Positions 6,942-51,906 of a DNA stretch of 64,000 nt are shown one piece after another. Position 1 is the stretch's first letter. Each line of letters begins with the position of its first letter. The stretch lies in IMG/VR virus record IMGVR_UViG_3300033145_003233, positions 310,001 through 374,000 of that record. One strand, written 5' to 3'. The notes below the pieces were generated by a model, which had not been told where the DNA came from, searched no databases, and saw only the letters and a program-made list of their open reading frames with translations. The position numbers were made by a program, and so were the translations under genes.

Positions 6942-8069
6942 CTATTTCTTTCTTACATTAACTAGAATCGGCTCTTTCCAATCAAAAGCTATAACCCATG
7001 CCCAATAACGAACTCTGCCCTCTATTAACTCATAGTCATAAAATCCTGTAGGGTCATCAATGGGAGAAACTTTAACTGGATTACATTTTTTATCTTCTTT
7101 TATTCTTTCAGACAACTCAACAGGACTAGGAGCAAATTTCATATCATTAGCTACAGCTTCTTCCACTGTCTTATATACTTTTCTATTACCTCTTCCTCCA
7201 TCATCAACTCTTATTTTTTCTGGATACACATATATTTTTTCTTTCTTAAAGACCCTGCCTATATCAGAAAAATCTTTTTCTGACATATCAAAATCAGAAG
7301 CTCTAGAATTATCTTCAATATGAGAGATATTAGTACTAGCAGGAATAGCCACTACTGAATCATTATGAGTTAACCAATTTAAAATAAGCTGAACAGAAGT
7401 TATGTCGTATTTGTCTATATATTTCTCAAAGATAATTTTTTCTTTATTATTGCCATAAAATTGTCCCTGATCTAAAGGGCTATAAGCTATCAGCGTGATA
7501 TCATTTTTGTCGCAATAAGAAAGAATTTCTTCCTCCACCCCTCTTTCAAAGAGATTATATTCAAGTTGCATAGAAACAATGTCATATTCAAAATTATTAC
7601 GAGCTTTTACAAACTCTTTAAAAGAAAAATTACTAACACCAACATGTTTAATTTTACCTTCCCTAATAAGCTTACCCATAGTCCACATAGTTTCTCCTAT
7701 GGGGATTTTATAATTCGGCCAGTGGATCTGATATAGATCTATACAATCTATACGTAATCTTTTTAAGCTTTCTTCTGCCGATTTTATAACATCATTAGAA
7801 GATAAATGCTCTGGTGACACTTTTGTAGCTATAACTATTTTATCCTTTTTATGTTGTGGAATACTTCCTATAAGTTCTTCAGCATGACCATTACCATAAG
7901 ATTCAGCAGTATCAAAAAAATTAATCCCACAATCTATGGCTTTTTCTATAGCTCTTTTACATTTTTCATCATTAGAAGTATCTGGCTCTAGATAACCGCC
8001 TATCCCCATTGACCCGAAACCAATAGAGGATATATTTATATCAGTATTGCCTAATTTTTTATATTTCAT
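6942..8069 (-). CDS. Aldo/keto reductase with C-terminal ParB/Srx-like domain
   Basis: GINFFDTAESYG, IDLYQIHWP, GVSNF, IAYSPL; tail YELIEGRVRYWAW. Confidence 0.85.
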   Translation of the reverse strand: MKYKKLGNTDINISSIGFGSMGIGGYLEPDTSNDEKCKRAIEKAIDCGINFFDTAESYGNGHAEELIGSIPQHKKDKIVIATKVSPEHLSSNDVIKSAEESLKRLRIDCIDLYQIHWPNYKIPIGETMWTMGKLIREGKIKHVGVSNFSFKEFVKARNNFEYDIVSMQLEYNLFERGVEEEILSYCDKNDITLIAYSPLDQGQFYGNNKEKIIFEKYIDKYDITSVQLILNWLTHNDSVVAIPASTNISHIEDNSRASDFDMSEKDFSDIGRVFKKEKIYVYPEKIRVDDGGRGNRKVYKTVEEAVANDMKFAPSPVELSERIKEDKKCNPVKVSPIDDPTGFYDYELIEGRVRYWAWVIAFDWKEPILVNVRKK

Positions 8070-8502
8070 TTTTTCTCACATTATTAATAATATCTAAATA
8101 CCATGCATCAGGAGATATAAATGTGGCCTTTGCCCCAGGAGTAGTAAGCTCCCCAACGCTACCCGAAATCATATTCTTGATAGAATTTTTTATACCATTA
8201 TTAAATTCCTGAGATAATATAAGCTTATCCGTATAGATATCATGATTATCTTCTAATTCCATTTCGTCCTTCAGGGACCATATATGCAGATTAGCTTGTG
8301 ACATCAAAATTATCTGTCTTATTAGCTTGGGTGTTAATTTTATATCTTTCTCATCTAACACGTAATCTATATCATGCGCTAACTTTTTTATTTCTCCCGA
8401 CCAATCAGCAGATAATAACATTTCTTTTATCTGACAAATAGATAACTTATCTATTAACTCAGCAAAAGTAAAATTAACTTTTTTTACAAGCTTATCGTCC
8501 AT
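8059..8502 (-). CDS. DUF6165/DUF4254-like helical protein, paralog 2
   Basis: FAELIDKLSICQIKE...MSQANLHIW. Confidence 0.6.
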   Translation of the reverse strand: MDDKLVKKVNFTFAELIDKLSICQIKEMLLSADWSGEIKKLAHDIDYVLDEKDIKLTPKLIRQIILMSQANLHIWSLKDEMELEDNHDIYTDKLILSQEFNNGIKNSIKNMISGSVGELTTPGAKATFISPDAWYLDIINNVRKNEI

Positions 8503-8906
8503 CCTTCTAACCCATCCACATTAATATTTGTTTTAATATCAACTGTATTCGACTCATCTACTTCCTGCATAATAATATTTTTAATTCTATTTCTAATACC
8601 ATTTAACTGATGAGACAATATGAGATGCTTCCCATAATCTTCACCAGAGCTTTTTTTCATTTTCTCTTTCTCTTTCCATATATAAAGATTAATTTGAGAC
8701 AAAATAATAATTAACCTAATAAATGTTGATGATGGTTTAATATCTCTCTTTTCTAAATCTACATTTATATCATGCATTAGATAACCAATCTCTTTTTCAA
8801 AATCATCTATCTCTGCAATATTATCAACCTCTTTAATTTGCTGTATAGACAAATTATCAATCAAATCTGAAAAAGACAAATGACATTCTCTTCTACCCAC
8901 TAACAC
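8484..8906 (-). CDS. DUF6165/DUF4254-like helical protein, paralog 3
   Basis: FSDLIDNLSIQQIKE...LSQINLYIW...LSHQLNGIRN. Confidence 0.6.
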   Translation of the reverse strand: MLVGRRECHLSFSDLIDNLSIQQIKEVDNIAEIDDFEKEIGYLMHDINVDLEKRDIKPSSTFIRLIIILSQINLYIWKEKEKMKKSSGEDYGKHLILSHQLNGIRNRIKNIIMQEVDESNTVDIKTNINVDGLEGWTISL

Positions 8907-9912
8907 ACTTCCCCACTTTTCTACTAGCTATGAATTTATTATTTTTATACCATTCCATAGTCTTTTTGATGCCTTCTTCCAAATTAACTCTAGGAACAAA
9001 AGAAAGCAAGGCCTTAGCTCTATTCGTATCAAGTATTCTTATCCTGTCACCAGAAGGCTTACTACTATCCCATTTCACTTCTATCTCTTCCGGCATCAAA
9101 TCGACAAGAGTTTCAACTAATTCTTTGATAGAAATTCCTCGTCCACTTCCTAAATTTATAGGAGTACAGGGAGGAGCATCTTTACATGCCATTAAAATTC
9201 CATCTACAACATCATCTACAAATATAAAATCTCTTTCAGCAGTCCCATCTCCTGCTATTTTCATGGGGTTCTCCCCATTTACCGCTCTACTAATTAAGGC
9301 CGGAATAACCTGTGCTGTTTCGGGATCGAAATCATCATAAGGACCATATACATTTGACAATCTTACAATCCTACCTGCGTCCCATCCATATTGAAGCATA
9401 TATGCTTCCGCTTGAGCTTCTCCGACTCTCTTAGCAATCCCGGCAAATCTATCATTAGCATGGGGAGGACCATCCCAAACTGAATCTTCGTGCCGTACTG
9501 AGAGATTGGGGTATTCACAAATACTACCAACAAACAAAAACCTTTTGACATTAGCTAATCTAGAAGCTTCCATCAAATTAGTATCAGCCATCAACAATGG
9601 AACGAAAGTACTAGCAACTTTCGATTCCCCTATTTGTGTACTCCCCTTTACACAGACTAAATTAAAAACATAATCGTAATCATGAACTAGGTCCTTACAA
9701 GCTTGGAAATCAGTTAAATCTACATATAAATTATAAACATCATATCCCTTAAAAACAGCCATAACCCTTTCCACTGAATCAATAGAAGCGACTGTTACAT
9801 ATGCCCCCATATCCATAAGCCGCTTAACTAATGGAGTTCCTATAGTTCCACTTCCTCCAGCCACTAATATATTTTTATCTTTATAAAATGAAATAAGATG
9901 TTCTGGAAACAT
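8893..9912 (-). CDS. NAD-dependent epimerase/reductase (extended SDR)
   Basis: AGGSGTIG, NVYGPYDDF, GDGTAERDF; AGIAK where YxxxK is expected. Confidence 0.85.
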   Translation of the reverse strand: MFPEHLISFYKDKNILVAGGSGTIGTPLVKRLMDMGAYVTVASIDSVERVMAVFKGYDVYNLYVDLTDFQACKDLVHDYDYVFNLVCVKGSTQIGESKVASTFVPLLMADTNLMEASRLANVKRFLFVGSICEYPNLSVRHEDSVWDGPPHANDRFAGIAKRVGEAQAEAYMLQYGWDAGRIVRLSNVYGPYDDFDPETAQVIPALISRAVNGENPMKIAGDGTAERDFIFVDDVVDGILMACKDAPPCTPINLGSGRGISIKELVETLVDLMPEEIEVKWDSSKPSGDRIRILDTNRAKALLSFVPRVNLEEGIKKTMEWYKNNKFIASRKVGKCVSG

Positions 9913-10636: not shown

Positions 10637-10637
10637 T

Positions 10638-11597
10638 TTATAATTTTTCCCAAACAGTTATAGAATAACCATCTCCCAATAGGCTTCCACATGGGACTCT
10701 CACCATTTTAATTATTTTAATTATTTTCTCTTTTTCCATCCTCATTAATTTTGTAAAGAAACCTTTCAAATAATTTCTATTATTTTCTAACTTACAAATA
10801 ATATAATCAGTCAAATTAGTGTCAGTATCATAAAACTCTAACATCGAATTGACATGTACATGTCTACTAAAAGGCTTGTCTAGTAAAAATTGTAAAAAAT
10901 CACCATATCTATTGCCTAGTTGTTCCAATGCTCCCAAAGTAAAGCTAACCCCGCCATCTTGAACTAAAAAATCATTATCAGGATAAAACATATCAAAAAT
11001 GCCACCATGAATATCATAATGAAATTTATCTCTGATAAGATTAATGATTGCTTGCGGTTGGCGGACCCAATCAACACCATAATAACTTTTTTCTGGAGCC
11101 ATCTCACAAAAAGATAACAAATTAGCACATGAGCCACAACCGAACTCGTAGATATTATCCTTGTCTTTTAAAAATGAATCAAAAACAAATGCTCTTATTA
11201 AATCTACAAAATTTTTCTCAAAATTATCATCCACTGATCTCACATAATCTCCAAACAAACGAATAGGAGAACCGCTCCTGAAATACTGAGGAGCCAAAGC
11301 AGCTTTGTCATACCCACTCTCAATAAAATTATCTTGTATTTCCCCCCAACCCTTCTCCCATTTTTCTTTTTTACCTTCACCAGATTTAGTAAAAATCTCT
11401 GCATCTATTCTTTTTATGAGTTCAAGTATTATTTTATCTCTTTCCCTCCTATCAATATGCCTATACCTAAAATCCCTATTATTAATTATATTAACACAGG
11501 ATAATGGCATCTCATTTTGATCAATATCAAAAATCATAGAGAAATCTTTAACGGTAAGATTGTGAATGTTTTCTCCCACTTTATTATTTTTCCACAA
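10638..11597 (-). CDS. Class I SAM-dependent methyltransferase
   Basis: IYEFGCGS, YYGVDW, GALEQLG. Confidence 0.75.
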   Translation of the reverse strand: MWKNNKVGENIHNLTVKDFSMIFDIDQNEMPLSCVNIINNRDFRYRHIDRRERDKIILELIKRIDAEIFTKSGEGKKEKWEKGWGEIQDNFIESGYDKAALAPQYFRSGSPIRLFGDYVRSVDDNFEKNFVDLIRAFVFDSFLKDKDNIYEFGCGSCANLLSFCEMAPEKSYYGVDWVRQPQAIINLIRDKFHYDIHGGIFDMFYPDNDFLVQDGGVSFTLGALEQLGNRYGDFLQFLLDKPFSRHVHVNSMLEFYDTDTNLTDYIICKLENNRNYLKGFFTKLMRMEKEKIIKIIKMVRVPCGSLLGDGYSITVWEKL

Positions 11598-14358: not shown

Positions 14359-14360
14359 AA

Positions 14361-16187: not shown

Positions 16188-16192
16188 AAAAA

Positions 16193-17870: not shown

Positions 17871-17906
17871 AATTTACTCCCTAACTTTATTAAAATAAAA
17901 AATATT

Positions 17907-18623
17907 TTATTGTTCAACTTCCTTTGCCCCATAAGAGTCCCAGCATTTAACCCTTATTTTTTTCAACACTATGCCAGCACAAACCGCTGCCCTCCGATTG
18001 CCCCATAATAATTTATATCCCTTGCTCCCATCAGGAGAGACATATCCCCTTACAACATTAATAAGATTACCATCATTATTATATTCTCCCTGACAATATC
18101 CATGTTTTTTTATACTTTCTGTTAATTCTATTAATCGAGAGGCTGATTTAAGAGCCTGATTTCCTTTTTTAAGCCTCCTTGTATGAATATTATCTATATT
18201 TTTTTTAGCTATTATAAATGTTTCAATCGCCCATTTTGTCAATACATGATTATCTAAATTCTCCAATACTCCCAAACCCATCCTAAGATAATCCCTAACG
18301 AATGTTGCCCATGGAGAATTACCAATTCTAAGAACATTATCTCCATCTTCCCTCCAATATTTCAAAAAAGGATCTTGCCATTCTCGATAAGGATAATATA
18401 ATGATTCTATATCTATAACCTTTATCTTTTTAGGAATCTCTGAAAATATCTTGGCTCTTTTTTTTCTTCTGCCTATCCTGGCTAAATGCTTCGGCAGTTT
18501 TCGAATAAACCTGGCCCTATATTTAGCCCTTTTTCTTGCCCTTCTTCTTGCTTCTTTTTTTTCTTTTTCGCTATCCATTGTAATTAACTTAAAAAGTGCA
18601 TTTAAAAATAGATCTACGGACAT
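17907..18623 (-). CDS. ParB/Srx-fold protein with basic N-terminus
   Basis: ESIKKHGY...YKLLWGNRRAA; paralog of 51427-51906. Confidence 0.6.
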   Translation of the reverse strand: MSVDLFLNALFKLITMDSEKEKKEARRRARKRAKYRARFIRKLPKHLARIGRRKKRAKIFSEIPKKIKVIDIESLYYPYREWQDPFLKYWREDGDNVLRIGNSPWATFVRDYLRMGLGVLENLDNHVLTKWAIETFIIAKKNIDNIHTRRLKKGNQALKSASRLIELTESIKKHGYCQGEYNNDGNLINVVRGYVSPDGSKGYKLLWGNRRAAVCAGIVLKKIRVKCWDSYGAKEVEQ

Positions 18624-19248
18624 GATCTCTTATATTGCCTATAAATTCTATTTTTTTAGCTTTAACATTCAAAGACAGTACTTCCTGTAATTCTTCTCGA
18701 CTATTCCTTCTATGTCCTTCAAACCAGCAGGTATCTCCACAATAACGATTGATTATATTCCATAAAACATTTTTGTCCTTAACATGATGATAAATAGAGA
18801 GAGCAAATATATAATCAAATTTTTCTTCTCCCAAAACTCCTGCAATCGACTCAAAACCCTGTTTGTTTAGATCATAACTAATAAGAGATATGTCACAATT
18901 ATGTCTAGAAAAGATATTAGAAGAAGCATTTAAAAGAATAGAATTTTTATCTAGCCCGACAACACGACCAGCTCCCCTGATTTTAGCATTATGGCACATG
19001 GCCCCCAAATTACATCCTATATCTAATACTGATTTTCCCTCAAAATCATTTGGTAGCTTCATAAATTTGCATCTTGCTTCCGTATCTCTAGTCCCTTTTA
19101 TAAGTCCAATTGTTTGATAAGGCTTTTTTCGATGTTTCTTATTAGTAAGTTTTGCTGCTTTCAAAATTTCCTTTTTATCCTGATCACTTAAATCTATTTT
19201 TTTCATACTTATTACCTTTTTAATATATCGATTAATACTTCTAAGCAC
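18589..19248 (-). CDS. Class I SAM methyltransferase (CmoB/DUF1698-like)
   Basis: GKSVLDIGCNLG, VVGLD, FALSIYHH. Confidence 0.85.
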   Translation of the reverse strand: MLRSINRYIKKVISMKKIDLSDQDKKEILKAAKLTNKKHRKKPYQTIGLIKGTRDTEARCKFMKLPNDFEGKSVLDIGCNLGAMCHNAKIRGAGRVVGLDKNSILLNASSNIFSRHNCDISLISYDLNKQGFESIAGVLGEEKFDYIFALSIYHHVKDKNVLWNIINRYCGDTCWFEGHRRNSREELQEVLSLNVKAKKIEFIGNIRDHVRRSIFKCTF

Positions 19249-23060: not shown

Positions 23061-23806
23061 TATATATTACTTCTCCTGACAAATTTATAAAAACTTATAT
23101 CATATTTATTAATTTCCTTTAACAAATCTTGAATACTTTTATCTTCCCAAGGAAACTTAATAGAGCGTTTTGAAACCCTCTTCATTACTTCACCATATTT
23201 TCTAAGTCCATAATAGTCGCATAGTCTTATTTGATCCTTGTGCCCATTATCAACATATCCTACAAAATCTATTTTTTCTTTTATATTGTATTTAGCAACT
23301 TGTAACATTTCTTCCATATCTTTATCCGTATTGTGCTCTTTGCGAGCATTCCATCCAAACATACCATGATAACCAAAATCCTTATCTGCACTATATTTCC
23401 TTGTGGCTACAGATTTAACATTTTCTTTTTTCTCCAGCCCAGATATCTGTTTAACCATCAAATTACATGCTACTTCTTTTTCCAAGCACCAATTCATAAA
23501 TCTCTTTAAATCTCTTTTATTCCTATTAAACAATTCACTTCCCCAAGAATCCTCTGATTCTATCCCATGATAAAATTGAGATATCCACCTTTGCACTGGA
23601 TCTCTAAGAAAAGTAAAATAAGAAAATTCTTCAGTATCAAATTGTTTATGCACTCCATATGGGAAATGTCCAGATATAATATCTGGAACATGTCCTTTTT
23701 TTGCGAAATATTTAAACCAAAAACTAAATTTTTGATTTTTCAAAATATAATTAATAGAGCTTCCTGATGTTTTCTGTATATGTAGAAAGATAATCACTAG
23801 TTCCAC
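23060..23806 (-). CDS. Sulfotransferase family 2 protein
   Basis: FLHIQKTSGSSI (5'-PSB) and FLRDPVQRWISQFYH (3'-PB). Confidence 0.85.
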   Translation of the reverse strand: MELVIIFLHIQKTSGSSINYILKNQKFSFWFKYFAKKGHVPDIISGHFPYGVHKQFDTEEFSYFTFLRDPVQRWISQFYHGIESEDSWGSELFNRNKRDLKRFMNWCLEKEVACNLMVKQISGLEKKENVKSVATRKYSADKDFGYHGMFGWNARKEHNTDKDMEEMLQVAKYNIKEKIDFVGYVDNGHKDQIRLCDYYGLRKYGEVMKRVSKRSIKFPWEDKSIQDLLKEINKYDISFYKFVRRSNI

Positions 23807-24459
23807 CTTCCGGTTAGGGTAAGGTGTCTCTCGTCTCTATGAATATCCATTTTTCTATTTTTAGCAAAATATTCCTTGTTAAAATCAGTTCTTTCCGTGT
23901 CCATGCCAGTTAAAAATTTTTGTTCTATAACTCCATATTTAGAAATTAAATTCATTAATTTAAAAATATTAAAAGGGGTACTATAATATTTTTTCTTACG
24001 AATATACTTTGATTCCAAATCACCATTCTTCCCCATCCTCCACATAAACAAATTAAAATAAAATTCCTTACTCACTCTAGAAACCTCTTTAATCGTCTTG
24101 CAAATATTAGGAGAATGCTCTATAACAGAACTCATATATATTATATCAAAAGATTTTTCTTTAAAAGGAAGCTCAACCATGTCCGCTTTATAAACCTTAA
24201 CATCCTTAACTTCTCTCGCCATATCTAGAAAAAAATCTGATATGTTAGCTGTACTATATGATATATAAGGAGCTTTTTCTAGGATAAGACAAGCCTCCCT
24301 CATTTCTCCCCCGCCTACTTCTAATATATTTTTTATATCCTTTCTCCTTATAATATAATTAACATATTCTTCCCTACAGGGATGATACCTATTTGTATTA
24401 ATCCATTTTACCTTACCAACCTTATAGTTGTTCCATTTTGTTGTATATTCATGTTCCAT
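23797..24459 (-). CDS. Class I SAM methyltransferase (type 11)
   Basis: ILEVGGG, LPFKEKSFD, VIEH. Confidence 0.8.
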   Translation of the reverse strand: MEHEYTTKWNNYKVGKVKWINTNRYHPCREEYVNYIIRRKDIKNILEVGGGEMREACLILEKAPYISYSTANISDFFLDMAREVKDVKVYKADMVELPFKEKSFDIIYMSSVIEHSPNICKTIKEVSRVSKEFYFNLFMWRMGKNGDLESKYIRKKKYYSTPFNIFKLMNLISKYGVIEQKFLTGMDTERTDFNKEYFAKNRKMDIHRDERHLTLTGRWN

Positions 24460-24470: not shown

Positions 24471-25004
24471 CTATAAGCTCTTATATCTTTCGTGTACCTT
24501 GCCATAACACTGATTAGTACCTGGCATCTCATCTTCAGCCAAAATAACCCTAACACGATCAATTCCCAATGCTAATAATGCCCCTATCCTATGATGTCCC
24601 ATAAATACCTCAGGAGATTTAATAGAAATATTCTTAACATTGTACCTTGAAACCACCAATGGGATATCCAACAAAACTATATAATTATTATTATATCCAT
24701 TTCTTAAATACCCCTCCTTAATAGAATCTAACAAGTGAATCTTTCTCATAGAAAGATATTTTTTACCATTTACGATACAACTAGCAATATGATATTTCGT
24801 ATTCTCATAATTTTCTTCCATCCATTTAAGACCCCGGCTATAATACAAAGAAGCGAACTCATAGTGAGGAGAATTTAACATTGATCTATCTATAACCCCA
24901 TCCGAATTTCTTAATATCTCTTCCATATCTGGAAAATATTGCATATAGGTTTTTTTTAAATCAACTTTGCTAATATTCTTACTTCTTAACCCATATCTTT
25001 TCAT
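24471..25004 (-). CDS. ParB/Srx-fold protein
   Basis: LLDSIKEGY...EVFMGHHRIGAL. Confidence 0.6.
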   Translation of the reverse strand: MKRYGLRSKNISKVDLKKTYMQYFPDMEEILRNSDGVIDRSMLNSPHYEFASLYYSRGLKWMEENYENTKYHIASCIVNGKKYLSMRKIHLLDSIKEGYLRNGYNNNYIVLLDIPLVVSRYNVKNISIKSPEVFMGHHRIGALLALGIDRVRVILAEDEMPGTNQCYGKVHERYKSL

Positions 25005-25027: not shown

Positions 25028-25666
25028 CTATGATATTCTCCTTTCCCCAATAACAATAGGTTTTTGATAGTTATTCCATCTGTAAACCCTGTATATAGAA
25101 TAGGAATGTTTTTCTAATATTTCTTTCATCCCCTCTACCCCAGCTTCTTTCTGGTTCTTTTTTACAACCCTTGGGATATTACCTTGTAATACTATAAAGC
25201 GATGATTGGGAATATTCTTAATTAAATTACTAAAAACTTTTTCCTGATAAGGCCTCAAATGATACAAAACGCAAAACATCGTTACTATATTAATGGCATT
25301 AGATTCAATAATCTCCTCAGTGATATTTAATCTCTTAATTTTCGGTTTCCACTTTTTACCCCTATTCTCAATCATAAATTTTTTATAGAATTCTATATGA
25401 TCCGTATTCATATCTATTGCCAAAACATCTGCCCCCATCCTTGTCATCTCATGATCATACAATCCCATATTACATCCTATATCTAGGACAGACGGACGAT
25501 CAAAAAGAGAAAACAACTCATTCATAACTGGCTTAATCCTATTCCAGTTATATACTCCCAGCGCCTCATCTCTTTTCTTTTTAGCATTAACCTCGACACC
25601 ATCAAAATTATAATAATAGTACCAGTGTTTATCTTTTATAAAAGCTTCTATTTCTTTTTTATTCAT
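25028..25666 (-). CDS. Class I SAM methyltransferase (CmoB/DUF1698-like)
   Basis: VLDIGCNMG, VLAID, VLYHL. Confidence 0.85.
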   Translation of the reverse strand: MNKKEIEAFIKDKHWYYYYNFDGVEVNAKKKRDEALGVYNWNRIKPVMNELFSLFDRPSVLDIGCNMGLYDHEMTRMGADVLAIDMNTDHIEFYKKFMIENRGKKWKPKIKRLNITEEIIESNAINIVTMFCVLYHLRPYQEKVFSNLIKNIPNHRFIVLQGNIPRVVKKNQKEAGVEGMKEILEKHSYSIYRVYRWNNYQKPIVIGERRIS

Positions 25667-28037: not shown

Positions 28038-28724
28038 TTATAATCTACCCATATGGTTATAAAAATTAGTTTTATATTTCTTATTCAACTTTCTTAAGAA
28101 ACCTCTCCTCAACTCATATTGTTGTTCCAACGTCATTTTGAAATTGCCCATGTGCTTTCTTAGCCATTTTTCTTTGCTCTTAAAATTATCTCCAGTAGCT
28201 TCTCCTCTCATACTCCAGTATTCGAGATGTTCAGAAATAGTAGAACAAGCATGTATGGCTAATAAATCATCGGTATAAACAACTTTAAACCCTAAATTTT
28301 TAGAATCTTTAGTAAAAGGTTTATCTATTTTACCAAGATGATCTATTCTAAAACCTATTTTTTTAGCATTTTTAAGATTATAAACCTTAATCCCCTTACA
28401 CCTTTTATTGCTCCATGGCTCCCATAATCTCCAACCTCTTAACGATACTTTAGACGACAATCCAGAAACACAATTATACATAAATTTTAAAGCATATGGA
28501 TTAAGCATCATGTCATCATCTACTCTTAAAAAAAAATTAGATCCACAATCTTTTAATATTTTTTCATGAGCAGAAAGCCAGTCCATATTTTCATGGACTC
28601 TTAAATTAAAATTAATGCCCTTCTGTTCCTCCACTGATTTCATACAATAGGGAAAAGTAGATCTTCCATTAGTTATAATGAAGACATCTATTATTCCATT
28701 TAAATCTATCAAATGTCTATTCAC
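28038..28724 (-). CDS. GT2-like glycosyltransferase
   Basis: FLRVDDDMML DxD motif. Confidence 0.65.
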   Translation of the reverse strand: MNRHLIDLNGIIDVFIITNGRSTFPYCMKSVEEQKGINFNLRVHENMDWLSAHEKILKDCGSNFFLRVDDDMMLNPYALKFMYNCVSGLSSKVSLRGWRLWEPWSNKRCKGIKVYNLKNAKKIGFRIDHLGKIDKPFTKDSKNLGFKVVYTDDLLAIHACSTISEHLEYWSMRGEATGDNFKSKEKWLRKHMGNFKMTLEQQYELRRGFLRKLNKKYKTNFYNHMGRL

Positions 28725-29631
28725 CTTTTAAAAATTTAATCCAATACCCTATTTTTTTACTCCAACAATGATACTCAACTACATCTTTTCTAATATTCTT
28801 ACTCATAAAACTTCTAAAATCATTATCCTTCATTATCTCTATTTTCTCGGCTATATCTTTTACATTTCTCTCGACAAACAACCCGTTTATACTATGTTTT
28901 ATTAGTTCCATACATCCTGTTATCCTCGTAGAGATAATAGGTATTCCACAAGAAGCAGCCTCGAGAACACTCAGAGAAAATCCTTCAGATGAAGAAGCAC
29001 ATATATAAGCATCTAATGTATTGTAAAAATTAGGCATCTCCTCCAGAGGAATATAAGTGTTGGTTCCCCTCATCGCTAATTTTGTTTTAACTTGAGCTTT
29101 CTGAGCAGCAGGAATAATGAACTCCGATATCCCTTTCCTCCAGTCATGTGTCTTTGTCCCTGAATAACCTACAGTAAAATCACCAGTCATGGTATCATTG
29201 GAAGGCACAAACAACGTAGTGTCAACTCCATTAGGAGTATAGTAAAGTTTTTTTAATCCTGCCTCTTTAAATAAATCATATAAATATTTAGAAACAGCAC
29301 CAACTCTTAAGAAAGTATTCAAAAGATTCACCAATTCTGTGGATGGAGTAACTATATCTGTTGGGCTAGTTTTTTTGCCGTCCCATGAATGACAAGAGTG
29401 TATCCCTACTATAGTTTTTTCTTTAGGTAAAAAATTTATTCTATCATATGTTTTAAAACCCATAACATAAAACAAATCATATTTACTATATATTTTTCTT
29501 ATATTCTTTTCATTACCCTTAATGGGATGGATATCAAGATTAAGTTTGCTATCATAATTAAATTTTAACAAATTCTTGGCGATGGTGTCAAAAGCCCAGT
29601 TAGGCTTATCTGTGAGAATGAGAACTCTCAA
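28717..29631 (-). CDS. GT4 glycosyltransferase
   Basis: PNGVD, EGFSLSVLEAASCG (EX7E). Confidence 0.9.
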   Translation of the reverse strand: MRVLILTDKPNWAFDTIAKNLLKFNYDSKLNLDIHPIKGNEKNIRKIYSKYDLFYVMGFKTYDRINFLPKEKTIVGIHSCHSWDGKKTSPTDIVTPSTELVNLLNTFLRVGAVSKYLYDLFKEAGLKKLYYTPNGVDTTLFVPSNDTMTGDFTVGYSGTKTHDWRKGISEFIIPAAQKAQVKTKLAMRGTNTYIPLEEMPNFYNTLDAYICASSSEGFSLSVLEAASCGIPIISTRITGCMELIKHSINGLFVERNVKDIAEKIEIMKDNDFRSFMSKNIRKDVVEYHCWSKKIGYWIKFLKGE

Positions 29632-29639
29632 ATTTTCCC

Positions 29640-30131
29640 CTATAAATTATAAGTTTTCAACCTGTAATCTAAATTAGCTTTTCTTATCCTTTTAGATTCT
29701 TTTTCTGAAAAAAGCTTTTCATATATAAATAGATTAACTTCGGTTTCAAGAATATTTAAATGTAATAAAATAGATAATCTATGAGATCCATCTATCCTAC
29801 ACCCATCGTCTGTAATAATAATTGAAGAGCCATTGTCAAAAGACTTATAACCATATCTTCTTATATCTTCATATCGCTTTTTGTAGTAACTTATTTTAGA
29901 AATAACTGCATTCTCCGGTTTCTTACCCTTATAATAATTCCAATACTCACTTTGTTCAAAATTAGATACATGTCCATCAAACAGGTATAATAATTCTCTA
30001 TGACGACTGCACTCATAACAGAAATCTGAGATATTAGCTTTGACAAGATTAGGATGTTTCTTAGCAAATTTGAAAGCTTTTTTCTGCCATGGAGATGAGG
30101 GCAGTCCTATTACCGGAGTTTTTATATTCAT
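29640..30131 (-). CDS. ParB/Srx-fold protein
   Basis: DIRRYGY...RIDGSHRLSIL; close paralog of 31604-32140. Confidence 0.65.
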   Translation of the reverse strand: MNIKTPVIGLPSSPWQKKAFKFAKKHPNLVKANISDFCYECSRHRELLYLFDGHVSNFEQSEYWNYYKGKKPENAVISKISYYKKRYEDIRRYGYKSFDNGSSIIITDDGCRIDGSHRLSILLHLNILETEVNLFIYEKLFSEKESKRIRKANLDYRLKTYNL

Positions 30132-31006
30132 TAAATTGCAATCCTATTAAAAAAATCTATATATTTCTTATATATTATCGACCAATCCCATTCCATTACA
30201 CTATTTCTGGCAGCGGCACTCATATAATAATATCTATTTTCTGAGATATCCTTATTATCATTTATGCAACTAATAAAAGATTTTAAATTATCTTCACAGA
30301 GAAAACCACCCACACTATCATTAACTATTTCAGCCATATTGCCAACTCGAGTAGAAATAACGGGAACACCACACGACAATGCTTCTAATCCAGGGTTAGG
30401 AGTCCCCTCAGCGGAGCTAGTTATTAAAAAGAAATCTAACGAATGATAAAAATCTTTCATTTCTTCAACATTCAACAAATCGTTATATTTAGACTTTTTA
30501 TAGGTGGCTACCTCCTTAAAAATAACTCCTGACATTTTCTTTTTCAAAGGCTTCATAATAGAGTGATAATTTTTTACTGCTCTATCCACATTACCCACCC
30601 ATCCCATAACCAATTTTTTACTCCGAGATTTATTCTTAAAAGAAAAATGATCGGTATCCACACCGCTAGGAGTGTAGCACAACCCGTTTACCTTATCTTT
30701 AAATATATTGAAAAGGATAAGACTATTAACAGACACCGCATCGAAAACCTTCAAAACCTGTAAGGTTTTTTTCATATTATTGAGACATTTATGGCTTGTA
30801 ACAGTGGCTACCTTCTTATTGTCGCAAGGTCTTTTCTTATATAACGAGAAATGAGTATAATAAACTAAATCATATTTTTCAGGACAAAATTTATCATTTA
30901 AAGAAATAACATCTATATAATACTCTTTAATATATCTCTTCAATATATGCATAATATTATACAAGCACCATCCCTGCTTATCTGTGACACATAATAATTT
31001 CTTCAT
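30131..31006 (-). CDS. GT4 glycosyltransferase
   Basis: PSGVD, EGTPNPGLEALSCG. Confidence 0.9.
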   Translation of the reverse strand: MKKLLCVTDKQGWCLYNIMHILKRYIKEYYIDVISLNDKFCPEKYDLVYYTHFSLYKKRPCDNKKVATVTSHKCLNNMKKTLQVLKVFDAVSVNSLILFNIFKDKVNGLCYTPSGVDTDHFSFKNKSRSKKLVMGWVGNVDRAVKNYHSIMKPLKKKMSGVIFKEVATYKKSKYNDLLNVEEMKDFYHSLDFFLITSSAEGTPNPGLEALSCGVPVISTRVGNMAEIVNDSVGGFLCEDNLKSFISCINDNKDISENRYYYMSAAARNSVMEWDWSIIYKKYIDFFNRIAI

Positions 31007-31548
31007 TAGTCGATATCTTTCCTAAATAACATAACAATATTACATTTAGATGGAGTTTTGCAGAACTTGCCGCAGAAAATAAGATTATCATATCTAAATA
31101 AATGCCTCAACTGCTCAATAGGAATATATTGTTTATGATGCTTATTACGCAAACATAACTTCTTATTCTCAGGAACAGTAATACAGATAATTCCATTAAT
31201 TTTAACAACCCTTCTTATCTCATCTACTGCTTTCAATATGTCTTTATCATCAAGATGTTCCAACGTCTCAGAACAAATAAAAACATCAGCATAGCAATCA
31301 TCACACGGAAGGTCACAAATACTAGAGATGGCGGCAGTGACACCCCTCTCAACAGCCGCTGAAACACATCCCTTCGATATATCATAACCAGTAACATCTA
31401 AATCAGCGGAACTTAAAATATGAGAACCGTATCCGTCTCCACAAGCACAATCTATTACCTTTGAACCAGCGTTCACCCCATATCTCAAAAGATGTTTAAG
31501 TATGTATTCATATCTTTTATTCCTGGGCTTAGCCATCCCGAACTCCAT
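31006..31548 (-). CDS. Class I SAM methyltransferase
   Basis: VIDCACGDGYG, ETLEHL. Confidence 0.88.
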   Translation of the reverse strand: MEFGMAKPRNKRYEYILKHLLRYGVNAGSKVIDCACGDGYGSHILSSADLDVTGYDISKGCVSAAVERGVTAAISSICDLPCDDCYADVFICSETLEHLDDKDILKAVDEIRRVVKINGIICITVPENKKLCLRNKHHKQYIPIEQLRHLFRYDNLIFCGKFCKTPSKCNIVMLFRKDID

Positions 31549-31603: not shown

Positions 31604-32140
31604 CTATCTTACTTTTTTCTCCAAATTTCTTCTATGTCTTTTATTCCTTCCTTCTATTCGTGAAGATTCTATATCAGAAAATAACCTTTTATACTTAAAA
31701 ACGCTCATATAAATTTCTAATATATTTAGATGCTTTAGAATAGATAACCTGTGCCCTCCATCTACAAGAATCCCGTCTTCTGTAATAATAATTGAAGATC
31801 CATGCTTATGCCTATGTCTGAAATTTTTCCCACTTTCAATTCTTTTTTTTATACCACAATATAATTTTATAAATTTTTCTATTTTTTCTGAAATGATATA
31901 GTTTCCCAATCCTCGTTCTTTAAAATATGTCCAATATTCAGTATCCTTAAAATATTTTTCTTTTTTATCGAATAATGACAACAATTCTTTATGACGACTA
32001 CACTCAAAGCAGAGATCAAGTATATTTAACTTAACGAAATTACGTTTTTCCCTTTTTCTAACAAACCTAATAACATCCGCATACCAAGGACGTATTTTTT
32101 CATATAAAATAGGAATAACAATATACCTTACATTAGCCAT
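31604..32140 (-). CDS. ParB/Srx-fold protein
   Basis: ILVDGGHRLSIL; paralog of 29640-30131. Confidence 0.65.
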   Translation of the reverse strand: MANVRYIVIPILYEKIRPWYADVIRFVRKREKRNFVKLNILDLCFECSRHKELLSLFDKKEKYFKDTEYWTYFKERGLGNYIISEKIEKFIKLYCGIKKRIESGKNFRHRHKHGSSIIITEDGILVDGGHRLSILKHLNILEIYMSVFKYKRLFSDIESSRIEGRNKRHRRNLEKKVR

Positions 32141-39002: not shown

Positions 39003-39025
39003 ACAAATATTCAAGAGGCCTTTAA

Positions 39026-39940: not shown

Positions 39941-39953
39941 TAAAGGAGATCTC

Positions 39954-42417: not shown

Positions 42418-42437
42418 GCACTCGCTCCTTATAAAAA

Positions 42438-44122: not shown

Positions 44123-44137
44123 GTCCTTACCTATATA

Positions 44138-44959: not shown

Positions 44960-45002
44960 TTGCCACCTTAACTCTAATAAAATATTTTTCTCATGTAATT
45001 AT

Positions 45003-45680: not shown

Positions 45681-45696
45681 CTTTATACTAATTATA

Positions 45697-46395: not shown

Positions 46396-46399
46396 TCTC

Positions 46400-47353
46400 T
46401 TATCCTATCTTGTTATTTTTTAATGTAATTAATATAACATTTTTTTCTCTATAAATGACATCATAATCTTTAATATCATATTTCTCTATATCCTCCATAT
46501 CTCTACACAAGATAATATCATAAGAATATTCATGCGGCATATCCCTACTAAAATATATGTTATCTTTATTATAATATTTCTTTATCTCATCTGATATTTT
46601 TAATTTATAAGATGAAGGAGTGATACCATAAATAGACTTACAATGATCAGATAAATTTACATCTAAATATCCATTATCATCTATAAGATTTAATATATTT
46701 CTATTTCTTATGATTGCTAAAAATTCCTTATCTACTAAAAGATCATTACTATCAAACTCTCCTCTCAATCCAAGATCTGCAATATTATATCTAAATTCTC
46801 CTTTAATTTTTCCACTGATCACTCCTTTTATAAATAAATTATTAATTTTTCTCCTGAATAATAATTTATCTATAATTTCAGCAGGCATGCCAACAAAATG
46901 TCTTGAAGATACGCTCCTATCCCTGTGGGGATGATTCCATATACTATCATCTTCAGTGGGAATAACATGAGCACTCATATGAGAATGACCTAGTACATAT
47001 GCGGCAGGAAGTCTTGTCTGCCCACCCGCTGGATAATAAAAACCTGTTTTTTTCTGATAAGAAAAACGAACATTTTTCAATATCTGACCCTCGTGAAAGC
47101 CTGTCTTCCATGCAAATTTTGTAGTCTTTACTGGGGTATCTTTAATTGCCTTAAACCACTTCATTAAATATTTATGGGTATAAGTTTTTTTCCTATTTCC
47201 TTTTCTACCGTGATCTACCCTTCGCCACAAATCAGCAGCGTCAACATCATTAGTCATTAATATATATATTTTAAATGCCGCAGCATCTTTATAGTCATAA
47301 CAAATTCTATTTAAAGGAACATTGGCGACTGGATAGCTTTCTGGACGAGGCAT
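46400..47353 (-). CDS. Hypothetical protein with ParB/Srx-like segment and degenerate methyltransferase-like C-terminus
   Basis: YYPAGGQTRL..AYVLG; C-terminal RNILNL...GY...L...CKSIYGI...YDIIL. Confidence 0.45.
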   Translation of the reverse strand: MPRPESYPVANVPLNRICYDYKDAAAFKIYILMTNDVDAADLWRRVDHGRKGNRKKTYTHKYLMKWFKAIKDTPVKTTKFAWKTGFHEGQILKNVRFSYQKKTGFYYPAGGQTRLPAAYVLGHSHMSAHVIPTEDDSIWNHPHRDRSVSSRHFVGMPAEIIDKLLFRRKINNLFIKGVISGKIKGEFRYNIADLGLRGEFDSNDLLVDKEFLAIIRNRNILNLIDDNGYLDVNLSDHCKSIYGITPSSYKLKISDEIKKYYNKDNIYFSRDMPHEYSYDIILCRDMEDIEKYDIKDYDVIYREKNVILITLKNNKIG

Positions 47354-47368
47354 GGTATTCTTTTCTCC

Positions 47369-49457: not shown

Positions 49458-49472
49458 AATTTCACCTAATAC

Positions 49473-50811: not shown

Positions 50812-50815
50812 AATA

Positions 50816-51427
50816 TTATCCCCTCCCAAATAAAAAAATATGCTGAATTGCATCTCTATCAAAAGTAGTGACTATCTTATTATTTTCACATTTTTTCGTA
50901 GAAAAGCCAATCTCACTGCATATATCTAGCATATTTTTAACAGAAAATCCTTTATTATGGAAATCATGCTGGCTATCAAGATCTATATCTTCAACAGTAG
51001 TAAGAAATAAACCACCACCCGGCTTTAAATTGCGATAACATGAATTAAGAAACCCCTCATAATTATCCAAATGTTCAATAGTTTCAATAGAGCATATAAA
51101 ATTGACATTACCCAGCAAAATATCATTATTTAAATCAAAGTTTATAAAACTCCTATTTAAAGCAGTATATTTATCTCGAGCAAAATCAATAGCATCTTTA
51201 GATATGTCCATACCGACATACGTATTCTTTTTAAAAATAAGAGAGCCATACCCGCAGCCACAAGCGACATCAAGAACCATACCCCTTTGAGGGGCGAATT
51301 CAGAAGCTTCATTATATCTATCAAGATGTCTGATTGTATTCATCTCATTAAAATTTGATATCTTCTTCACATCATCATAGAATATACGTTCAAGAGTTAA
51401 AAATCTTTTATCTTTATATATTTTCAT
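50816..51427 (-). CDS. Class I SAM methyltransferase
   Basis: HLDRY, VLDVACGCGYG, ETIEHL, LKPGG. Confidence 0.9.
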   Translation of the reverse strand: MKIYKDKRFLTLERIFYDDVKKISNFNEMNTIRHLDRYNEASEFAPQRGMVLDVACGCGYGSLIFKKNTYVGMDISKDAIDFARDKYTALNRSFINFDLNNDILLGNVNFICSIETIEHLDNYEGFLNSCYRNLKPGGGLFLTTVEDIDLDSQHDFHNKGFSVKNMLDICSEIGFSTKKCENNKIVTTFDRDAIQHIFLFGRG

Positions 51428-51906
51428 TATGTTAATTTAATCCTAACTTTTTTAATACCCAATGCACAACAAACTGCCGCCCTATGTTTCCTACTTTTCA
51501 ATACATATGATTTTTTATCTGGAGAATATTTATCATGATTTGAAGTTTTATAAGCCCTTATCAAATGCCTCGTCTTATCATATTTCCCCTCACAATAACC
51601 ATGTTCCTTTATAGACTCCACCATTCTTATCACTCTATTAGCAGCATTATATTTGTGTCTGTCATCTTTCACTGTTTCAGCATCAGAATATCTATCATAT
51701 TCATATTGTATAAATATATGAGAGTCCAAATTATCCAGAATATCTTTACCATGCTTAAGATAGTCTTCTGCGAAGATGGCAAGAGGATGATTTCCCATCC
51801 ATAAATAATTACCATCTTTTCTCCAGTACTTTTTGTAATAAGATTTTAAATCAGGCTTATAAGGGAAGAACAACAAGTCTATAGGTATCGTTATAATAGA
51901 TGGCAT
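51427..51906 (-). CDS. ParB/Srx-fold protein
   Basis: ESIKEHGY...YVLKSRKHRAAVC; paralog of 17907-18623. Confidence 0.55.
   Translation of the reverse strand: MPSIITIPIDLLFFPYKPDLKSYYKKYWRKDGNYLWMGNHPLAIFAEDYLKHGKDILDNLDSHIFIQYEYDRYSDAETVKDDRHKYNAANRVIRMVESIKEHGYCEGKYDKTRHLIRAYKTSNHDKYSPDKKSYVLKSRKHRAAVCCALGIKKVRIKLT

What the first reader, a model, noticed from the sequence alone, without database searches (positions are those of the whole stretch)
6942..51906. Seven ParB/Srx-fold domains without an HTH, repeatedly placed beside methyltransferases in a glycan locus
Seen: a (SI..GY)...G.(H/R)R signature in 17907-18623 (WGNRR), 24471-25004 (MGHHR), 29640-30131 (DGSHR), 31604-32140 (DGGHR), 46400-47353 (GGQTR), 51427-51906 (SRKHR) and the tail of the AKR (EGRVR). 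None has a ParB HTH, and no ParA is in the window. Four sit directly next to class I methyltransferases (18589; 25028 and 23797; 31006; 50816), one appears fused to a decayed methyltransferase domain and one lies between two GT4 genes. Known: the ParB/Srx fold binds CTP or ATP and includes small-molecule kinases (SerK, SbnI). Inference: this may be an unrecognised glycan-tailoring enzyme class, for example a kinase paired with a methyltransferase to cap chains with methyl-phosphate (functionally like WbdD), or a CTP-handling partner of the CMP-sugar pathways. Best candidate for an undescribed system here.
Basis: partly seen in the sequence, partly recalled or inferred. Interest (0 to 1): 0.85.

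Follow-up and report, generated by a model that had tools for sequence, protein, structure and literature searches.

The report
ParB-like helper proteins in viral glycan island
Five small genes in a giant, virus-like sugar-building gene island form an unannotated branch of the ParB/sulfiredoxin nucleotide-binding fold. They sit beside, and elsewhere are fused to, glycosyltransferases and methyltransferases, so they probably act as partner modules of sugar-tailoring enzymes, though their chemistry is untested.

Summary
Five of the seven proposed domains (17907-18623, 24471-25004, 29640-30131, 31604-32140, 51427-51906) are paralogues of one family. Subfamily profiles link them (hhalign 83-99.9%). 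Two AlphaFold2 models (pLDDT 95 and 89) hit almost only ParB/Srx structures. The aldo-keto reductase (AKR) tail is ParB_N-like by predicted-structure neighbours. The 46400-47353 N-terminus is only tentative.

Pfam, NCBIfam and PHROGs do not detect the family. It has about 378 clusters among 1.84 billion representatives. One Arg in a G-[H/S]-H-R motif is invariant. There is no HTH and no ParA.

The window lies on a 548-kb IMG/VR viral contig with prokaryote-style genes, probably a huge phage. Its ≥64-kb glycan island has no membrane proteins.

Four of the five members touch a class I methyltransferase (p≈0.003). Across 28 related loci the link to GT4 glycosyltransferases is stronger (17/44 vs 8.0 expected). 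The methyltransferase link there depends on subfamily.

The same module is fused elsewhere to a GT4, to class I methyltransferases and to a B12-radical-SAM enzyme.

Best reading: a portable nucleotide-binding partner or activator of glycan-tailoring enzymes. A glycan kinase remains a live rival. It is a new variant of a known fold.

The parts
51427..51906 (-). F-type member (159 aa). ParB/Srx core with a ~60-80-aa helical insert between strand 1 and the SIK..GY helix. Motif S-R-K-H-R. Placed between a GT4 and a class I methyltransferase, with 1-nt spacing or overlap.
   Evidence: AF2 pLDDT 94.9. Foldseek top 50 all ParB/Srx. 29 homologues at 53-86% identity. A GT4 lies upstream in about 10 orthologous loci.
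17907..18623 (-). A-type member (238 aa) with a Lys/Arg-rich N-terminal extension of ~60 aa. Motif W-G-N-R-R. Its start overlaps the 3' end of the upstream methyltransferase by 35 nt.
   Evidence: 37% identity to F. hhalign F-A 99.9%. A methyltransferase of one clade is directly upstream in 4 of that clade's 5 loci.
24471..25004 (-). B-type member (177 aa). Motif M-G-H-H-R. Flanked on both sides by class I methyltransferases.
   Evidence: hhalign B-F 97.2% and B-C 96.9%. B-type relatives P0070, P0073 and P0074 exist, and the B12-rSAM fusion P0100 carries a B-type domain (32% identity, 1.9e-19).
29640..30131 (-). C-type member (163 aa). Motif D-G-S-H-R, a conserved C-Y-E-C..R-H segment and a C-terminal helix. 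Lies between two GT4 genes.
   Evidence: AF2 pLDDT 89.2. Foldseek top hit pNOB8 ParB-N, probability 0.99. Homologues P0002-P0010.
31604..32140 (-). D, a C-type paralogue (178 aa). Motif D-G-G-H-R. Lies between an MptE/Maf-like gene and a class I methyltransferase.
   Evidence: 44% identity to C. Family profile E 2e-31. Neighbours.
46400..47353 (-). E (317 aa). Possible ParB/Srx-like N-terminal domain (about residues 1-150, G-G-Q-T-R) plus a Rossmann, methyltransferase-like C-terminal half. The glycine-rich SAM motif is replaced by a conserved D-N-G-Y. Not a member of the five-gene family.
   Evidence: Atlas structure and feature neighbours. Four homologues conserve A-G-G-x-[ST]-R and D-N-G-Y-L. 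No profile support.
6945..7247 (-). C-terminal ~100 residues of the aldo-keto reductase 6942-8069. ParB_N-like domain (E-G-R-V-R). A separate branch from the five-gene family.
   Evidence: Atlas structure search: TM 0.66-0.71 to ParB_N clusters, and TM 0.86 to a 52-member AKR cluster that is mostly viral. Pfam sees only Aldo_ket_red at residues 16-270.
18589..19248 (-). Class I SAM methyltransferase, the conserved upstream partner of the A-type member.
   Evidence: Pfam Methyltransf_23/9/31/12/25. Partner clade in the tree.
25028..25666 (-). Class I SAM methyltransferase upstream of B.
   Evidence: Pfam. Members of its clade lie next to, or one or two genes from, family members in four other loci.
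23797..24459 (-). Class I SAM methyltransferase downstream of B.
   Evidence: Pfam Methyltransf_11/25.
31006..31548 (-). Class I SAM methyltransferase downstream of D.
   Evidence: Pfam Methyltransf_23/31/11/12/25.
50816..51427 (-). Class I SAM methyltransferase downstream of F, with a 1-nt overlap.
   Evidence: Pfam. Only generic small-molecule methyltransferase hits in the PDB.
51908..52819 (-). GT4 glycosyltransferase upstream of F. This is the conserved neighbour of F-type orthologues.
   Evidence: Pfam Glycos_transf_1. Synteny.
28717..31006 (-). GT4 - C-type member - GT4 block.
   Evidence: Pfam Glycos_transf_1 / Glyco_trans_1_4 on both flanking genes.

Best explanation
SHOWN. A, B, C, D and F are paralogues of one unannotated family of the ParB/Srx (ParB N-terminal domain) superfamily.
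- They are about 160 residues long.
- A helical subdomain is inserted after the first strand.
- There is no HTH and no dimerisation domain.
- The phosphate-binding Arg of the G-x-x-R motif (here G-[H/S]-H-R) is invariant.
- The family lives in large, membrane-protein-free glycan-building islands of huge virus-like contigs.
- It is a portable module. It occurs stand-alone, tightly coupled to GT4 glycosyltransferases and class I methyltransferases. Elsewhere it is fused to a GT4, to class I methyltransferases or to a B12-radical-SAM enzyme.

INFERRED (most likely mechanism). Each paralogue is the cognate partner of one tailoring enzyme. It binds a nucleotide at the conserved Arg/His site. That nucleotide could be ATP or CTP, or the nucleotide handle of a CMP- or NDP-sugar. 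The variable helical insert docks to the partner or the acceptor. In this way the module activates the glycosyl- or methyl-transfer step or gives it specificity. The acceptor would be cytoplasmic, probably a virion protein.

This resembles the HTH-less phage ParB-like proteins that activate cognate 5mYOX dioxygenases. Its distribution resembles the stand-alone-or-fused RRE recognition domains of RiPP pathways.
For: - Fold.
- One family.
- Family-wide invariants: Arg 151/151, His 145, Gly 144, plus an S-I-K..G-Y helix.
- Same island type in every locus examined, including the more distant members P0057, P0060 and P0074.
- Up to four or five paralogues per locus (window, L041, L045).
- Adjacency enrichment: GT4 17/44 vs 8.0 expected (p=0.0002). 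Methyltransferase 13/44 vs 7.1 (p=0.011). Window alone 4/5 (p=0.0026).
- Partner methyltransferase clades are conserved for the A and B types.
- Overlapping or abutting reading frames with partners.
- Fusions: P0106 is a full GT4 plus the module, P0138, P0185 and P0186 are the module plus a class I methyltransferase, and P0100 is B12-binding plus radical SAM plus the module.
- The modules of P0106 and P0138 are 47% identical (1.8e-43), so one subfamily is joined to either enzyme class.
- Precedent for ParB-fold proteins as cognate-specific enzyme activators, with nucleotide-site mutations tolerated: PMC13229309.
- Precedent for ATP binding by ParB-fold-methyltransferase fusions: PMC12704722.
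Against: - No interaction, nucleotide binding or activity was tested. Co-folding could not be run.
- Adjacent loci share ancestry, so the permutation p-values overstate independence.
- Outside the window the methyltransferase adjacency is not significant (p=0.14).
- Some members sit next to NeuB, CMP-sugar synthetase or unknown genes instead.
- Strong conservation of polar and aromatic residues in the insert, and of the His-Arg pair, fits a true enzyme just as well.
- Each fusion rests on a single short metagenomic contig.
- Foldseek E-values are weak (0.02-2). The fold call rests on the consistency of the hits.
Confidence: 0.4

Rival explanations
1. Glycan or sugar kinase. The module transfers phosphate from ATP or ADP to a sugar hydroxyl or carboxylate, as SerK and SbnI do to serine and Srx does to a sulfinate. 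The neighbouring methyltransferase or GT4 then acts on or next to that phosphate, for example to make methyl-phosphate.
For: - ParB/Srx enzymes with phosphotransfer chemistry (SerK, SbnI, Srx) are among the structural hits.
- The His-Arg pair is invariant.
- The insert carries many conserved polar and aromatic residues.
- Fusions to methyltransferases resemble the kinase-methyltransferase logic of WbdD. That comparison is from my own knowledge, not tested here.
- ParB-fold-methyltransferase fusions bind ATP (PMC12704722).
Against: - Up to four or five paralogues per locus would mean an unusually phosphorylated product.
- The proteins lack the second domain of SerK and SbnI, whose PDB chains are 232-254 residues against ~160 here.
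- No conserved Glu or Gln was evident after strand 1, by eye in the alignments.
- Fusion to a GT4 and to a B12-radical-SAM enzyme is not explained by methyl-phosphate capping.
- There is no export machinery for a capped polymer.
Confidence: 0.3
2. DNA-directed role. The island hypermodifies viral DNA with glycans, and the ParB-like proteins load or activate DNA-modifying enzymes, or act as ParB-like nucleases.
For: - Phage DNA-hypermodification clusters often combine ParB homologues, glycosyltransferases, O-methyltransferases and kinases (PMC13229309).
- ParB-fold-methyltransferase fusions are enriched in phages and were interpreted as DNA methyltransferases (PMC12704722).
- A-type members carry a Lys/Arg-rich tail.
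- The pathway is cytoplasmic.
Against: - No Tet_JBP/5mYOX, hydroxymethylase or DNA-methyltransferase Pfam family is recorded for the called genes of the window.
- The neighbours are nonulosonic-acid synthases, CMP-sugar synthetases, sulfotransferases and Maf/MptE-like genes, which typify protein or surface glycans.
- The adjacent methyltransferases resemble small-molecule enzymes.
- The modules have no DNA-binding domain.
Confidence: 0.1
3. No functional coupling. The modules are independent small proteins, and their placement beside methyltransferases and GT4 genes reflects inherited synteny and the high density of such genes in the island.
For: Methyltransferases and GT4 genes make up about 8% each of island genes. 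The non-window methyltransferase adjacency gives p=0.14. Many loci are orthologous.
Against: Independent fusions to GT4, class I methyltransferase and radical-SAM enzymes. Conserved partner clades. Reading-frame overlaps.
Confidence: 0.1

Closest known systems
ParB N-terminal domain / ParB-Srx superfamily (Pfam PF02195, ParB-CTPase fold)
   Same: Same core fold. An S-I..G helix is followed by a strand-strand-helix unit carrying G-x-x-R, with the Arg invariant.
   Different: Not detected by PF02195: 0 of 142 members reach threshold and one has a sub-threshold E of 4e-4. A large helical insert follows strand 1. The motif is G-[H/S]-H-R, not G-E-R-R. There is no HTH, no C-terminal dimerisation domain and no ParA.
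ParB-CTPase-fold fusions to class I SAM methyltransferases (Methyltransf_23, phage-enriched; Kaljevic et al. 2025, PMC12704722)
   Same: The pairing of a ParB fold with a class I methyltransferase. The fused proteins P0138, P0185 and P0186 are hit by this family's profile. E may be a decayed fusion of this kind.
   Different: Here the module is mostly stand-alone, multi-copy, and also paired or fused with GT4 and radical-SAM enzymes inside glycan islands. That survey used PF02195 at its gathering threshold, which does not detect this family.
5mYOX-associated phage ParB-like activators (PMC13229309)
   Same: Phage-encoded ParB-like proteins without a DNA-binding domain, acting as cognate-specific partners that switch on a tailoring enzyme.
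   Different: Those keep a canonical nucleotide-binding domain plus a C-terminal dimerisation domain, and they act with DNA dioxygenases. No 5mYOX is seen here, and the partners are glycan enzymes.
Free serine kinases SerK and SbnI
   Same: HTH-less ParB/Srx enzymes that act on small molecules. They are among the structural hits, aligning 60-75 columns at rmsd 2-4 Å.
   Different: They are two-domain proteins (PDB chains 232-254 residues). There is no sequence similarity and no serine or cysteine pathway context.
Sulfiredoxin
   Same: A minimal ParB/Srx core with a x-H-R motif. It gives the top Foldseek hits for F.
   Different: The catalytic Cys of the Srx motif is replaced by Lys, Ser, His or Asn in this family (that Srx carries a Cys there is from my own knowledge; the replacements are). 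There is no peroxiredoxin context.
WbdD (O-antigen chain terminator, kinase plus methyltransferase)
   Same: Functional analogy only: a nucleotide-using module coupled to a methyltransferase in glycan tailoring (from my own knowledge).
   Different: The WbdD kinase has a protein-kinase-like fold and acts on an ABC-exported polymer (my own knowledge). No export system is present here.
RRE domains of RiPP pathways (analogy only)
   Same: A small module found stand-alone or fused to radical-SAM enzymes, methyltransferases and other tailoring enzymes of one pathway (my own knowledge).
   Different: Unrelated fold and substrate class. The analogy concerns distribution only.

Membership tests
ParB/Srx superfamily (fold level) | Core fold with a helix-strand-strand-helix unit around G-x-x-R | tested here: met
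   The AF2 models of F and C hit Srx, ParB, Noc, KorB, SerK, SbnI, PadC, Osa and pNOB8 ParB-N. This covers all top 50 hits for F and the top 32 for C.
ParB/Srx superfamily (fold level) | Conserved phosphate-binding Arg of the P-motif | tested here: met
   Arg present in 151/151 aligned members. The preceding His is present in 145 and the Gly in 144.
Pfam ParB_N (PF02195) | Match to the family HMM at its gathering score | tested here: not met
   No hit for A-F at E≤1. Of 142 family members, only one has a sub-threshold hit (20.8 bits against a cut-off of 26.3).
Canonical ParB (CTP-dependent DNA clamp) | HTH DNA-binding domain and C-terminal dimerisation domain | tested here: not met
   The models end at the core (F) or with one extra helix (C). 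No HTH_ParB or ParB_C Pfam hits.
Canonical ParB (CTP-dependent DNA clamp) | G-E-R-R-x-R-A box II and a ParA partner | tested here: not met
   The motif is G-[H/S]-H-R. No ParA-type family is recorded for the called genes of the window.
Canonical ParB (CTP-dependent DNA clamp) | CTP binding and hydrolysis | not testable with these tools
   Needs nucleotide-binding assays.
SerK/SbnI free serine kinases | Two-domain architecture, with the substrate bound between the ParB-like domain and a C-terminal domain | tested here: not met
   Members are ~160 residues with a single domain. The SerK, SbnI and 1vk1 PDB chains are 232-254 residues.
SerK/SbnI free serine kinases | Catalytic acidic residue near strand 1 | tested here: inconclusive
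   No conserved Glu or Gln was seen after strand 1, by eye, in the alignments. No residue-level structural alignment was available.
Sulfiredoxin | Catalytic Cys immediately before His-Arg | tested here: not met
   That position is His (79), Ser (37), Lys (12) or Asn (9) across the family.
ParB-fold-class I methyltransferase fusions | ParB-like domain and an intact SAM-binding Rossmann domain in one chain | tested here: inconclusive
   This applies only to E. Atlas neighbours are such fusions (cosine 0.77-0.87) and methyltransferases (TM 0.41-0.48). The glycine-rich motif is replaced by D-N-G-Y. No Pfam hit. A-D and F are stand-alone.
5mYOX-associated ParB activators | Neighbouring Tet/JBP-type dioxygenase and a C-terminal dimerisation domain | tested here: not met
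   No Tet_JBP family is recorded in the window or its flanks. No C-terminal domain in the models.

The most novel reading that the evidence does not exclude
The family is a new class of glycan-pathway component on the ParB/Srx fold. It could be a true sugar or glycan phosphotransferase. It could instead be an RRE-like, nucleotide-dependent recruitment and activation module that giant phages attach to glycosyltransferases, SAM methyltransferases and radical-SAM enzymes to build complex virion glycans.
Probability: 0.35. Interest if true: 0.85.

Novelty: new variant of a known kind. Interest (0 to 1): 0.62.

Why it matters
The ParB/Srx fold is currently being re-evaluated as a general nucleotide-binding switch used beyond chromosome segregation. 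The 2025 survey of that fold searched with the Pfam model at its gathering threshold, which does not detect this family.

A multi-copy, HTH-less branch wired to glycosyltransferases and methyltransferases would extend the fold into glycobiology. It would give a handle on how huge phages assemble very complex glycans. Here the island exceeds 64 kb and has several nonulosonic-acid pathways, sulfotransferases and at least 11 methyltransferases.

It also offers small, well-folding proteins with obvious partners. These could be used to test whether ParB-like modules act generally as enzyme activators. The 2026 work on thymine dioxygenases raised that question but did not settle the mechanism.

Tried and rejected
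- Pfam, NCBIfam and PHROGs scans of the candidates found nothing relevant.
- Sequence and profile searches of the PDB gave only a marginal ParB nuclease hit (5k5a, E=1) for the C family.
- Two scans of GTDB species-representative genomes, with the F and C family patterns, found no relative.
- tblastn of F and C against deposited phage genomes found no match.
- tblastn of the flanking topoisomerase and the AKR against the phage collection returned only unannotated hits that did not place the virus.
- hhalign of the E family and the AKR tail against the five-gene family gave no support, so they are not filed as members.
- PDB searches with two partner methyltransferases matched only generic class I SAM enzymes, so the substrate is not inferable.
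- Pfam on ten neighbouring unknown proteins gave nothing except a weak MptE-like hit.
- The contexts of the GT4 and radical-SAM fusions could not be read because their contigs are only 1.9 and 2.9 kb.
- Foldseek against the viral structure library failed because the models were no longer available.
- No tRNA or Rfam element was found in the window or its flanks.
- A eukaryotic giant virus was considered as host genome. This is judged unlikely because Shine-Dalgarno tetramers peak at -20 to -5 and genes overlap by 1-4 nt.

Full report
WHERE THE WINDOW COMES FROM

The window is positions 310001-374000 of JGI contig Ga0366840_1000004 (547,943 bp). The same contig is listed in IMG/VR as UViG_3300033145_003233.

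Nearly all genes are on the minus strand, and G+C is about 32%.

The DNA flanking the island has many small ORFs with no Pfam hit. It also has HNH and endonuclease VII genes, inteins, peptide deformylase, DUF1257, NADAR and a type IA topoisomerase.

Shine-Dalgarno tetramers pile up at -20 to -5 before start codons: 57 occurrences, against 3-11 per 8-nt bin further upstream. Many genes overlap by 1-4 nt.

I therefore read the contig as a huge phage or another prokaryotic virus-like element. No capsid or terminase gene was seen, so this is an inference.

THE ISLAND

Precomputed Pfam calls and my local profiles show at least 64 kb of sugar-pathway genes:
- three NeuB genes, plus one more in the flank
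- four CTP_transf_3 (CMP-sugar synthetase) genes
- 2-hydroxyacid dehydrogenases, an HpcH aldolase and a HAD hydrolase
- epimerases/dehydratases and split transketolase/E1-like genes
- two sulfotransferases
- GT2 and GT4 glycosyltransferases
- two Maf/MptE-like genes
- at least 11 methyltransferases of several types

None of the 82 predicted proteins has more than one hydrophobic window. No flippase, polymerase, ABC exporter or initiating phosphoglycosyltransferase family is recorded. The product is therefore probably built on a soluble cytoplasmic acceptor. A virion protein is the natural guess, and this is an inference.

CHECKING THE OBSERVATION

Pfam and NCBIfam see nothing ParB-like in any of the seven candidates.

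BLASTP pairs A with F (37% identity, 1e-30) and C with D (44%, 1e-39). B is weakly similar to A and F.

I collected homologues of F (29 proteins) and C (9 proteins) and aligned them.

AlphaFold2 gave confident models. F has pLDDT 94.9 and pTM 0.89. C has pLDDT 89.2 and pTM 0.81.

Foldseek against the PDB returned, for F, only ParB/Srx-superfamily proteins among the 50 listed hits. These include sulfiredoxin, SbnI, ParB, Noc, KorB, SerK and its Pyrococcus homologue, PadC, Osa and Atu1540. About 70 residues align at 2-4 Å, and probabilities reach 0.97.

For C, the pNOB8 ParB N-domain leads (probability 0.99, E 0.025) and the same set follows.

The E-values are weak. The argument rests on the unanimity of the hits and on motif conservation.

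Independent subfamily alignments link all five proteins:
- F-A 99.9%
- F-B 97.2% (3.6e-11)
- B-C 96.9% (1.7e-10)
- F-C 83% (8.7e-6)

A joint alignment lines them up over their full length, with one invariant residue, the Arg of G-x-x-R.

A profile built from 155 family sequences finds exactly these five genes in the window.

THE OTHER TWO CANDIDATES

The aldo-keto reductase 6942-8069 carries about 100 extra C-terminal residues. The Atlas predicted model of this tail matches nine listed ParB_N clusters at TM 0.66-0.71. It also matches a 52-member, mostly viral AKR cluster at TM 0.86. It is a ParB_N-like domain of a different branch. Profiles do not connect it to the five-gene family.

For 46400-47353, the N-terminal 150 residues have Atlas structural neighbours that are a 'ParB/Sulfiredoxin' cluster and the N-termini of X-methyltransferase fusions, at TM 0.53-0.60. 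The model itself is mediocre.

Its C-terminal half looks methyltransferase-like, but the glycine-rich SAM motif is replaced by a conserved D-N-G-Y. Profile comparisons give nothing.

I treat this protein as a plausible, unproven, decayed ParB-like-methyltransferase fusion.

ANATOMY OF THE FAMILY

In F the elements run in this order:
- strand 3-8
- a helical subdomain at 18-80
- the long S-I-K..G-Y helix at 84-102
- strands 116-121 and 133-138
- the helix that starts at the K-H-R motif, 140-149
- the final strand 153-158

C has the same plan plus a C-terminal helix.

Across 155 sequences the consensus is F..L-Y.S-I-K..G-Y, then a strand, then G-Y-E...G-[H/S]-H-R.A...L-G...V. Arg is present in 151/151 aligned sequences, His in 145 and Gly in 144.

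The insert is conserved within subfamilies but differs between them.

A-type members add a Lys/Arg-rich N-terminal tail of 60-90 residues.

HOW WIDESPREAD IT IS

An exhaustive profile search of 1.84 billion representative proteins found 378 clusters at E≤1e-3 and 57 at E≤1e-10. Most are stand-alone proteins of 150-240 residues.

Only one of 142 members scanned gets even a sub-threshold ParB_N hit.

Pattern scans of GTDB representative genomes and tblastn against deposited phages found nothing.

Relatives come from marine and other aquatic metagenomes and from six IMG/VR contigs of 164-548 kb.

GENE CONTEXT

Every locus I could read is the same kind of island. This includes loci for three more distant members. 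Several loci carry two to four or five paralogues.

I ran a permutation test over 28 non-redundant loci, with 44 family members among 490 genes:
- A GT4 is an immediate neighbour 17 times, against 8.0 expected (p=0.0002).
- A class I methyltransferase is an immediate neighbour 13 times, against 7.1 expected (p=0.011).
- In the window alone the methyltransferase count is 4 of 5 (p=0.0026).
- Outside the window it is 9 of 39, against 6.2 expected (p=0.14).

These loci are related, so the p-values are optimistic.

A tree of the methyltransferases shows the link is subfamily-specific:
- The A-type partner clade is directly upstream of the module in 4 of its 5 loci.
- B-type members keep MT-MT-B or MT-B-MT arrangements.
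- F-type orthologues keep a GT4 upstream. Several of them have an unknown gene of ~374 aa plus a 178-aa methyltransferase downstream.

Reading frames usually overlap or abut.

FUSIONS

Among the longer hits:
- P0106 is a complete GT4 followed by the module.
- P0138, P0185 and P0186 are the module followed by a class I methyltransferase.
- P0100 is a B12-binding domain plus radical SAM followed by a B-type module.

The modules of P0106 and P0138 are 47% identical (1.8e-43). One subfamily is therefore joined to either a glycosyltransferase or a methyltransferase.

A stand-alone homologue of the P0100 enzyme part (about 26% identity over ~400 residues, E 8e-27), presumably also a B12-radical-SAM enzyme, lies in one island (L041) close to a stand-alone module.

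Each fusion is known from one short contig, so assembly-level confirmation is desirable.

INTERPRETATION

Shown:
- an unannotated ParB/Srx-fold family
- a retained phosphate-binding Arg/His
- no DNA-binding domain
- multiple copies per island
- physical linkage to three mechanistically unrelated tailoring enzyme classes, sometimes by fusion

Inferred: the module is a portable partner of these enzymes.

Two papers give the nearest experimental frame. Kaljevic et al. 2025 (PMC12704722) surveyed the ParB-CTPase fold. They found fusions to Methyltransf_23 enriched in phages and showed ATP binding by bacterial SAM-methyltransferase fusions. Their search used PF02195 at its gathering threshold, which this family does not reach.

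The 2026 study of phage thymine dioxygenases (PMC13229309) showed that ParB-like proteins lacking a DNA-binding domain act as cognate-specific activators of a partner enzyme, and that nucleotide-site mutations were tolerated.

By analogy, I favour a nucleotide-binding activator or specificity subunit (confidence about 0.4).

It fits the His-Arg site and the enzyme-like conservation. It explains the GT4 and radical-SAM fusions less well, as well as the four or five copies per locus and the absence of the SerK/SbnI second domain.

A DNA-hypermodification role is possible for a phage. However, there is no 5mYOX, no hydroxymethylase, no DNA-type methyltransferase and no DNA-binding domain, and the sugar pathways are those of protein or surface glycans (about 0.1).

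Pure synteny without function is contradicted by the fusions (about 0.1).

VERDICT

This is a ParB/Srx-fold family tied to glycan tailoring that has been overlooked. The proposed chemistry is unproven. The methyltransferase link is one of at least two partner types. The host genome is viral.

This is a new variant of a known kind, and it is of moderate to high interest.

Noticed in passing
window 1-64000 and flanks (L029, L030): The window lies on a 548-kb IMG/VR viral contig with prokaryote-style gene organisation. It carries a one-strand sugar-pathway island of at least 64 kb with no multi-pass membrane protein and no Wzx, Wzy, ABC or initiating transferase. A glycan island of this size in a virus-like genome is remarkable in itself.
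   Followed up: partly
window 17907-18623 (N-terminal ~60 residues); L025:1309-2061; L025:2063-2674; L028:9881-10501: A-type members carry a strongly Lys/Arg-rich N-terminal extension of 40-90 residues that is absent from the other subfamilies. It could bind nucleic acid or an acidic (sulfated, nonulosonate-rich) glycan.
   Followed up: no
window 6942-8069: This is an aldo-keto reductase fused to a C-terminal ParB_N-like domain. The Atlas holds a 52-member cluster of such ~367-aa proteins, mostly viral, that Pfam labels only as Aldo_ket_red.
   Followed up: partly
window 42438-44122; L006:2531-4188; L009, L011, L012, L015, L018: A conserved pair is present: an unknown protein of ~374-384 aa followed by a 178-aa class I methyltransferase. 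In other loci this pair directly follows the F-type module. In the window it sits about 7 kb away from F. The larger protein has no Pfam match.
   Followed up: partly
window 32851-33660: A gene with MerR, GIY-YIG and NUMOD3 hits, resembling a homing endonuclease, lies inside the glycan island next to the MptE-like gene and module D.
   Followed up: no
window 63176-63910; L030:6916-7488: ORFs with intein-splicing/Hint hits lie at the upstream edge of the island, with several HNH/endonuclease VII genes nearby.
   Followed up: no
window 10638-16187: Four or five consecutive genes encode split transketolase/E1-type thiamine-diphosphate enzymes (E1_dh, Transket_pyr, Transketolase_N). This suggests a branched-chain or two-carbon-extended sugar is made here.
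   Followed up: no
window 39026-40553 (+ strand): Two genes on the opposite strand interrupt the otherwise unidirectional island. One is an unknown 304-aa protein and the other is a Methyltransf_24 protein.
   Followed up: no
window 29640-30131 and homologues (alignment A4): C-type members have an invariant C-Y-E-C..R-H segment plus a nearly invariant Cys in D-G-C. This is a possible metal site that the other subfamilies lack.
   Followed up: no
L041:3834-5294: A stand-alone homologue of the enzyme part of the fusion protein P0100, presumably a B12-radical-SAM enzyme, sits in a related island close to a stand-alone module (L041:2671-3156). This mirrors the fused arrangement.
   Followed up: partly
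window GT4 genes 28717-29631, 30131-31006, 51908-52819: The GT4 genes next to the modules are short (291-304 aa), and only the C-terminal Glycos_transf_1 half is recognised by Pfam. The fused GT4 in P0106 has both halves.
   Followed up: no
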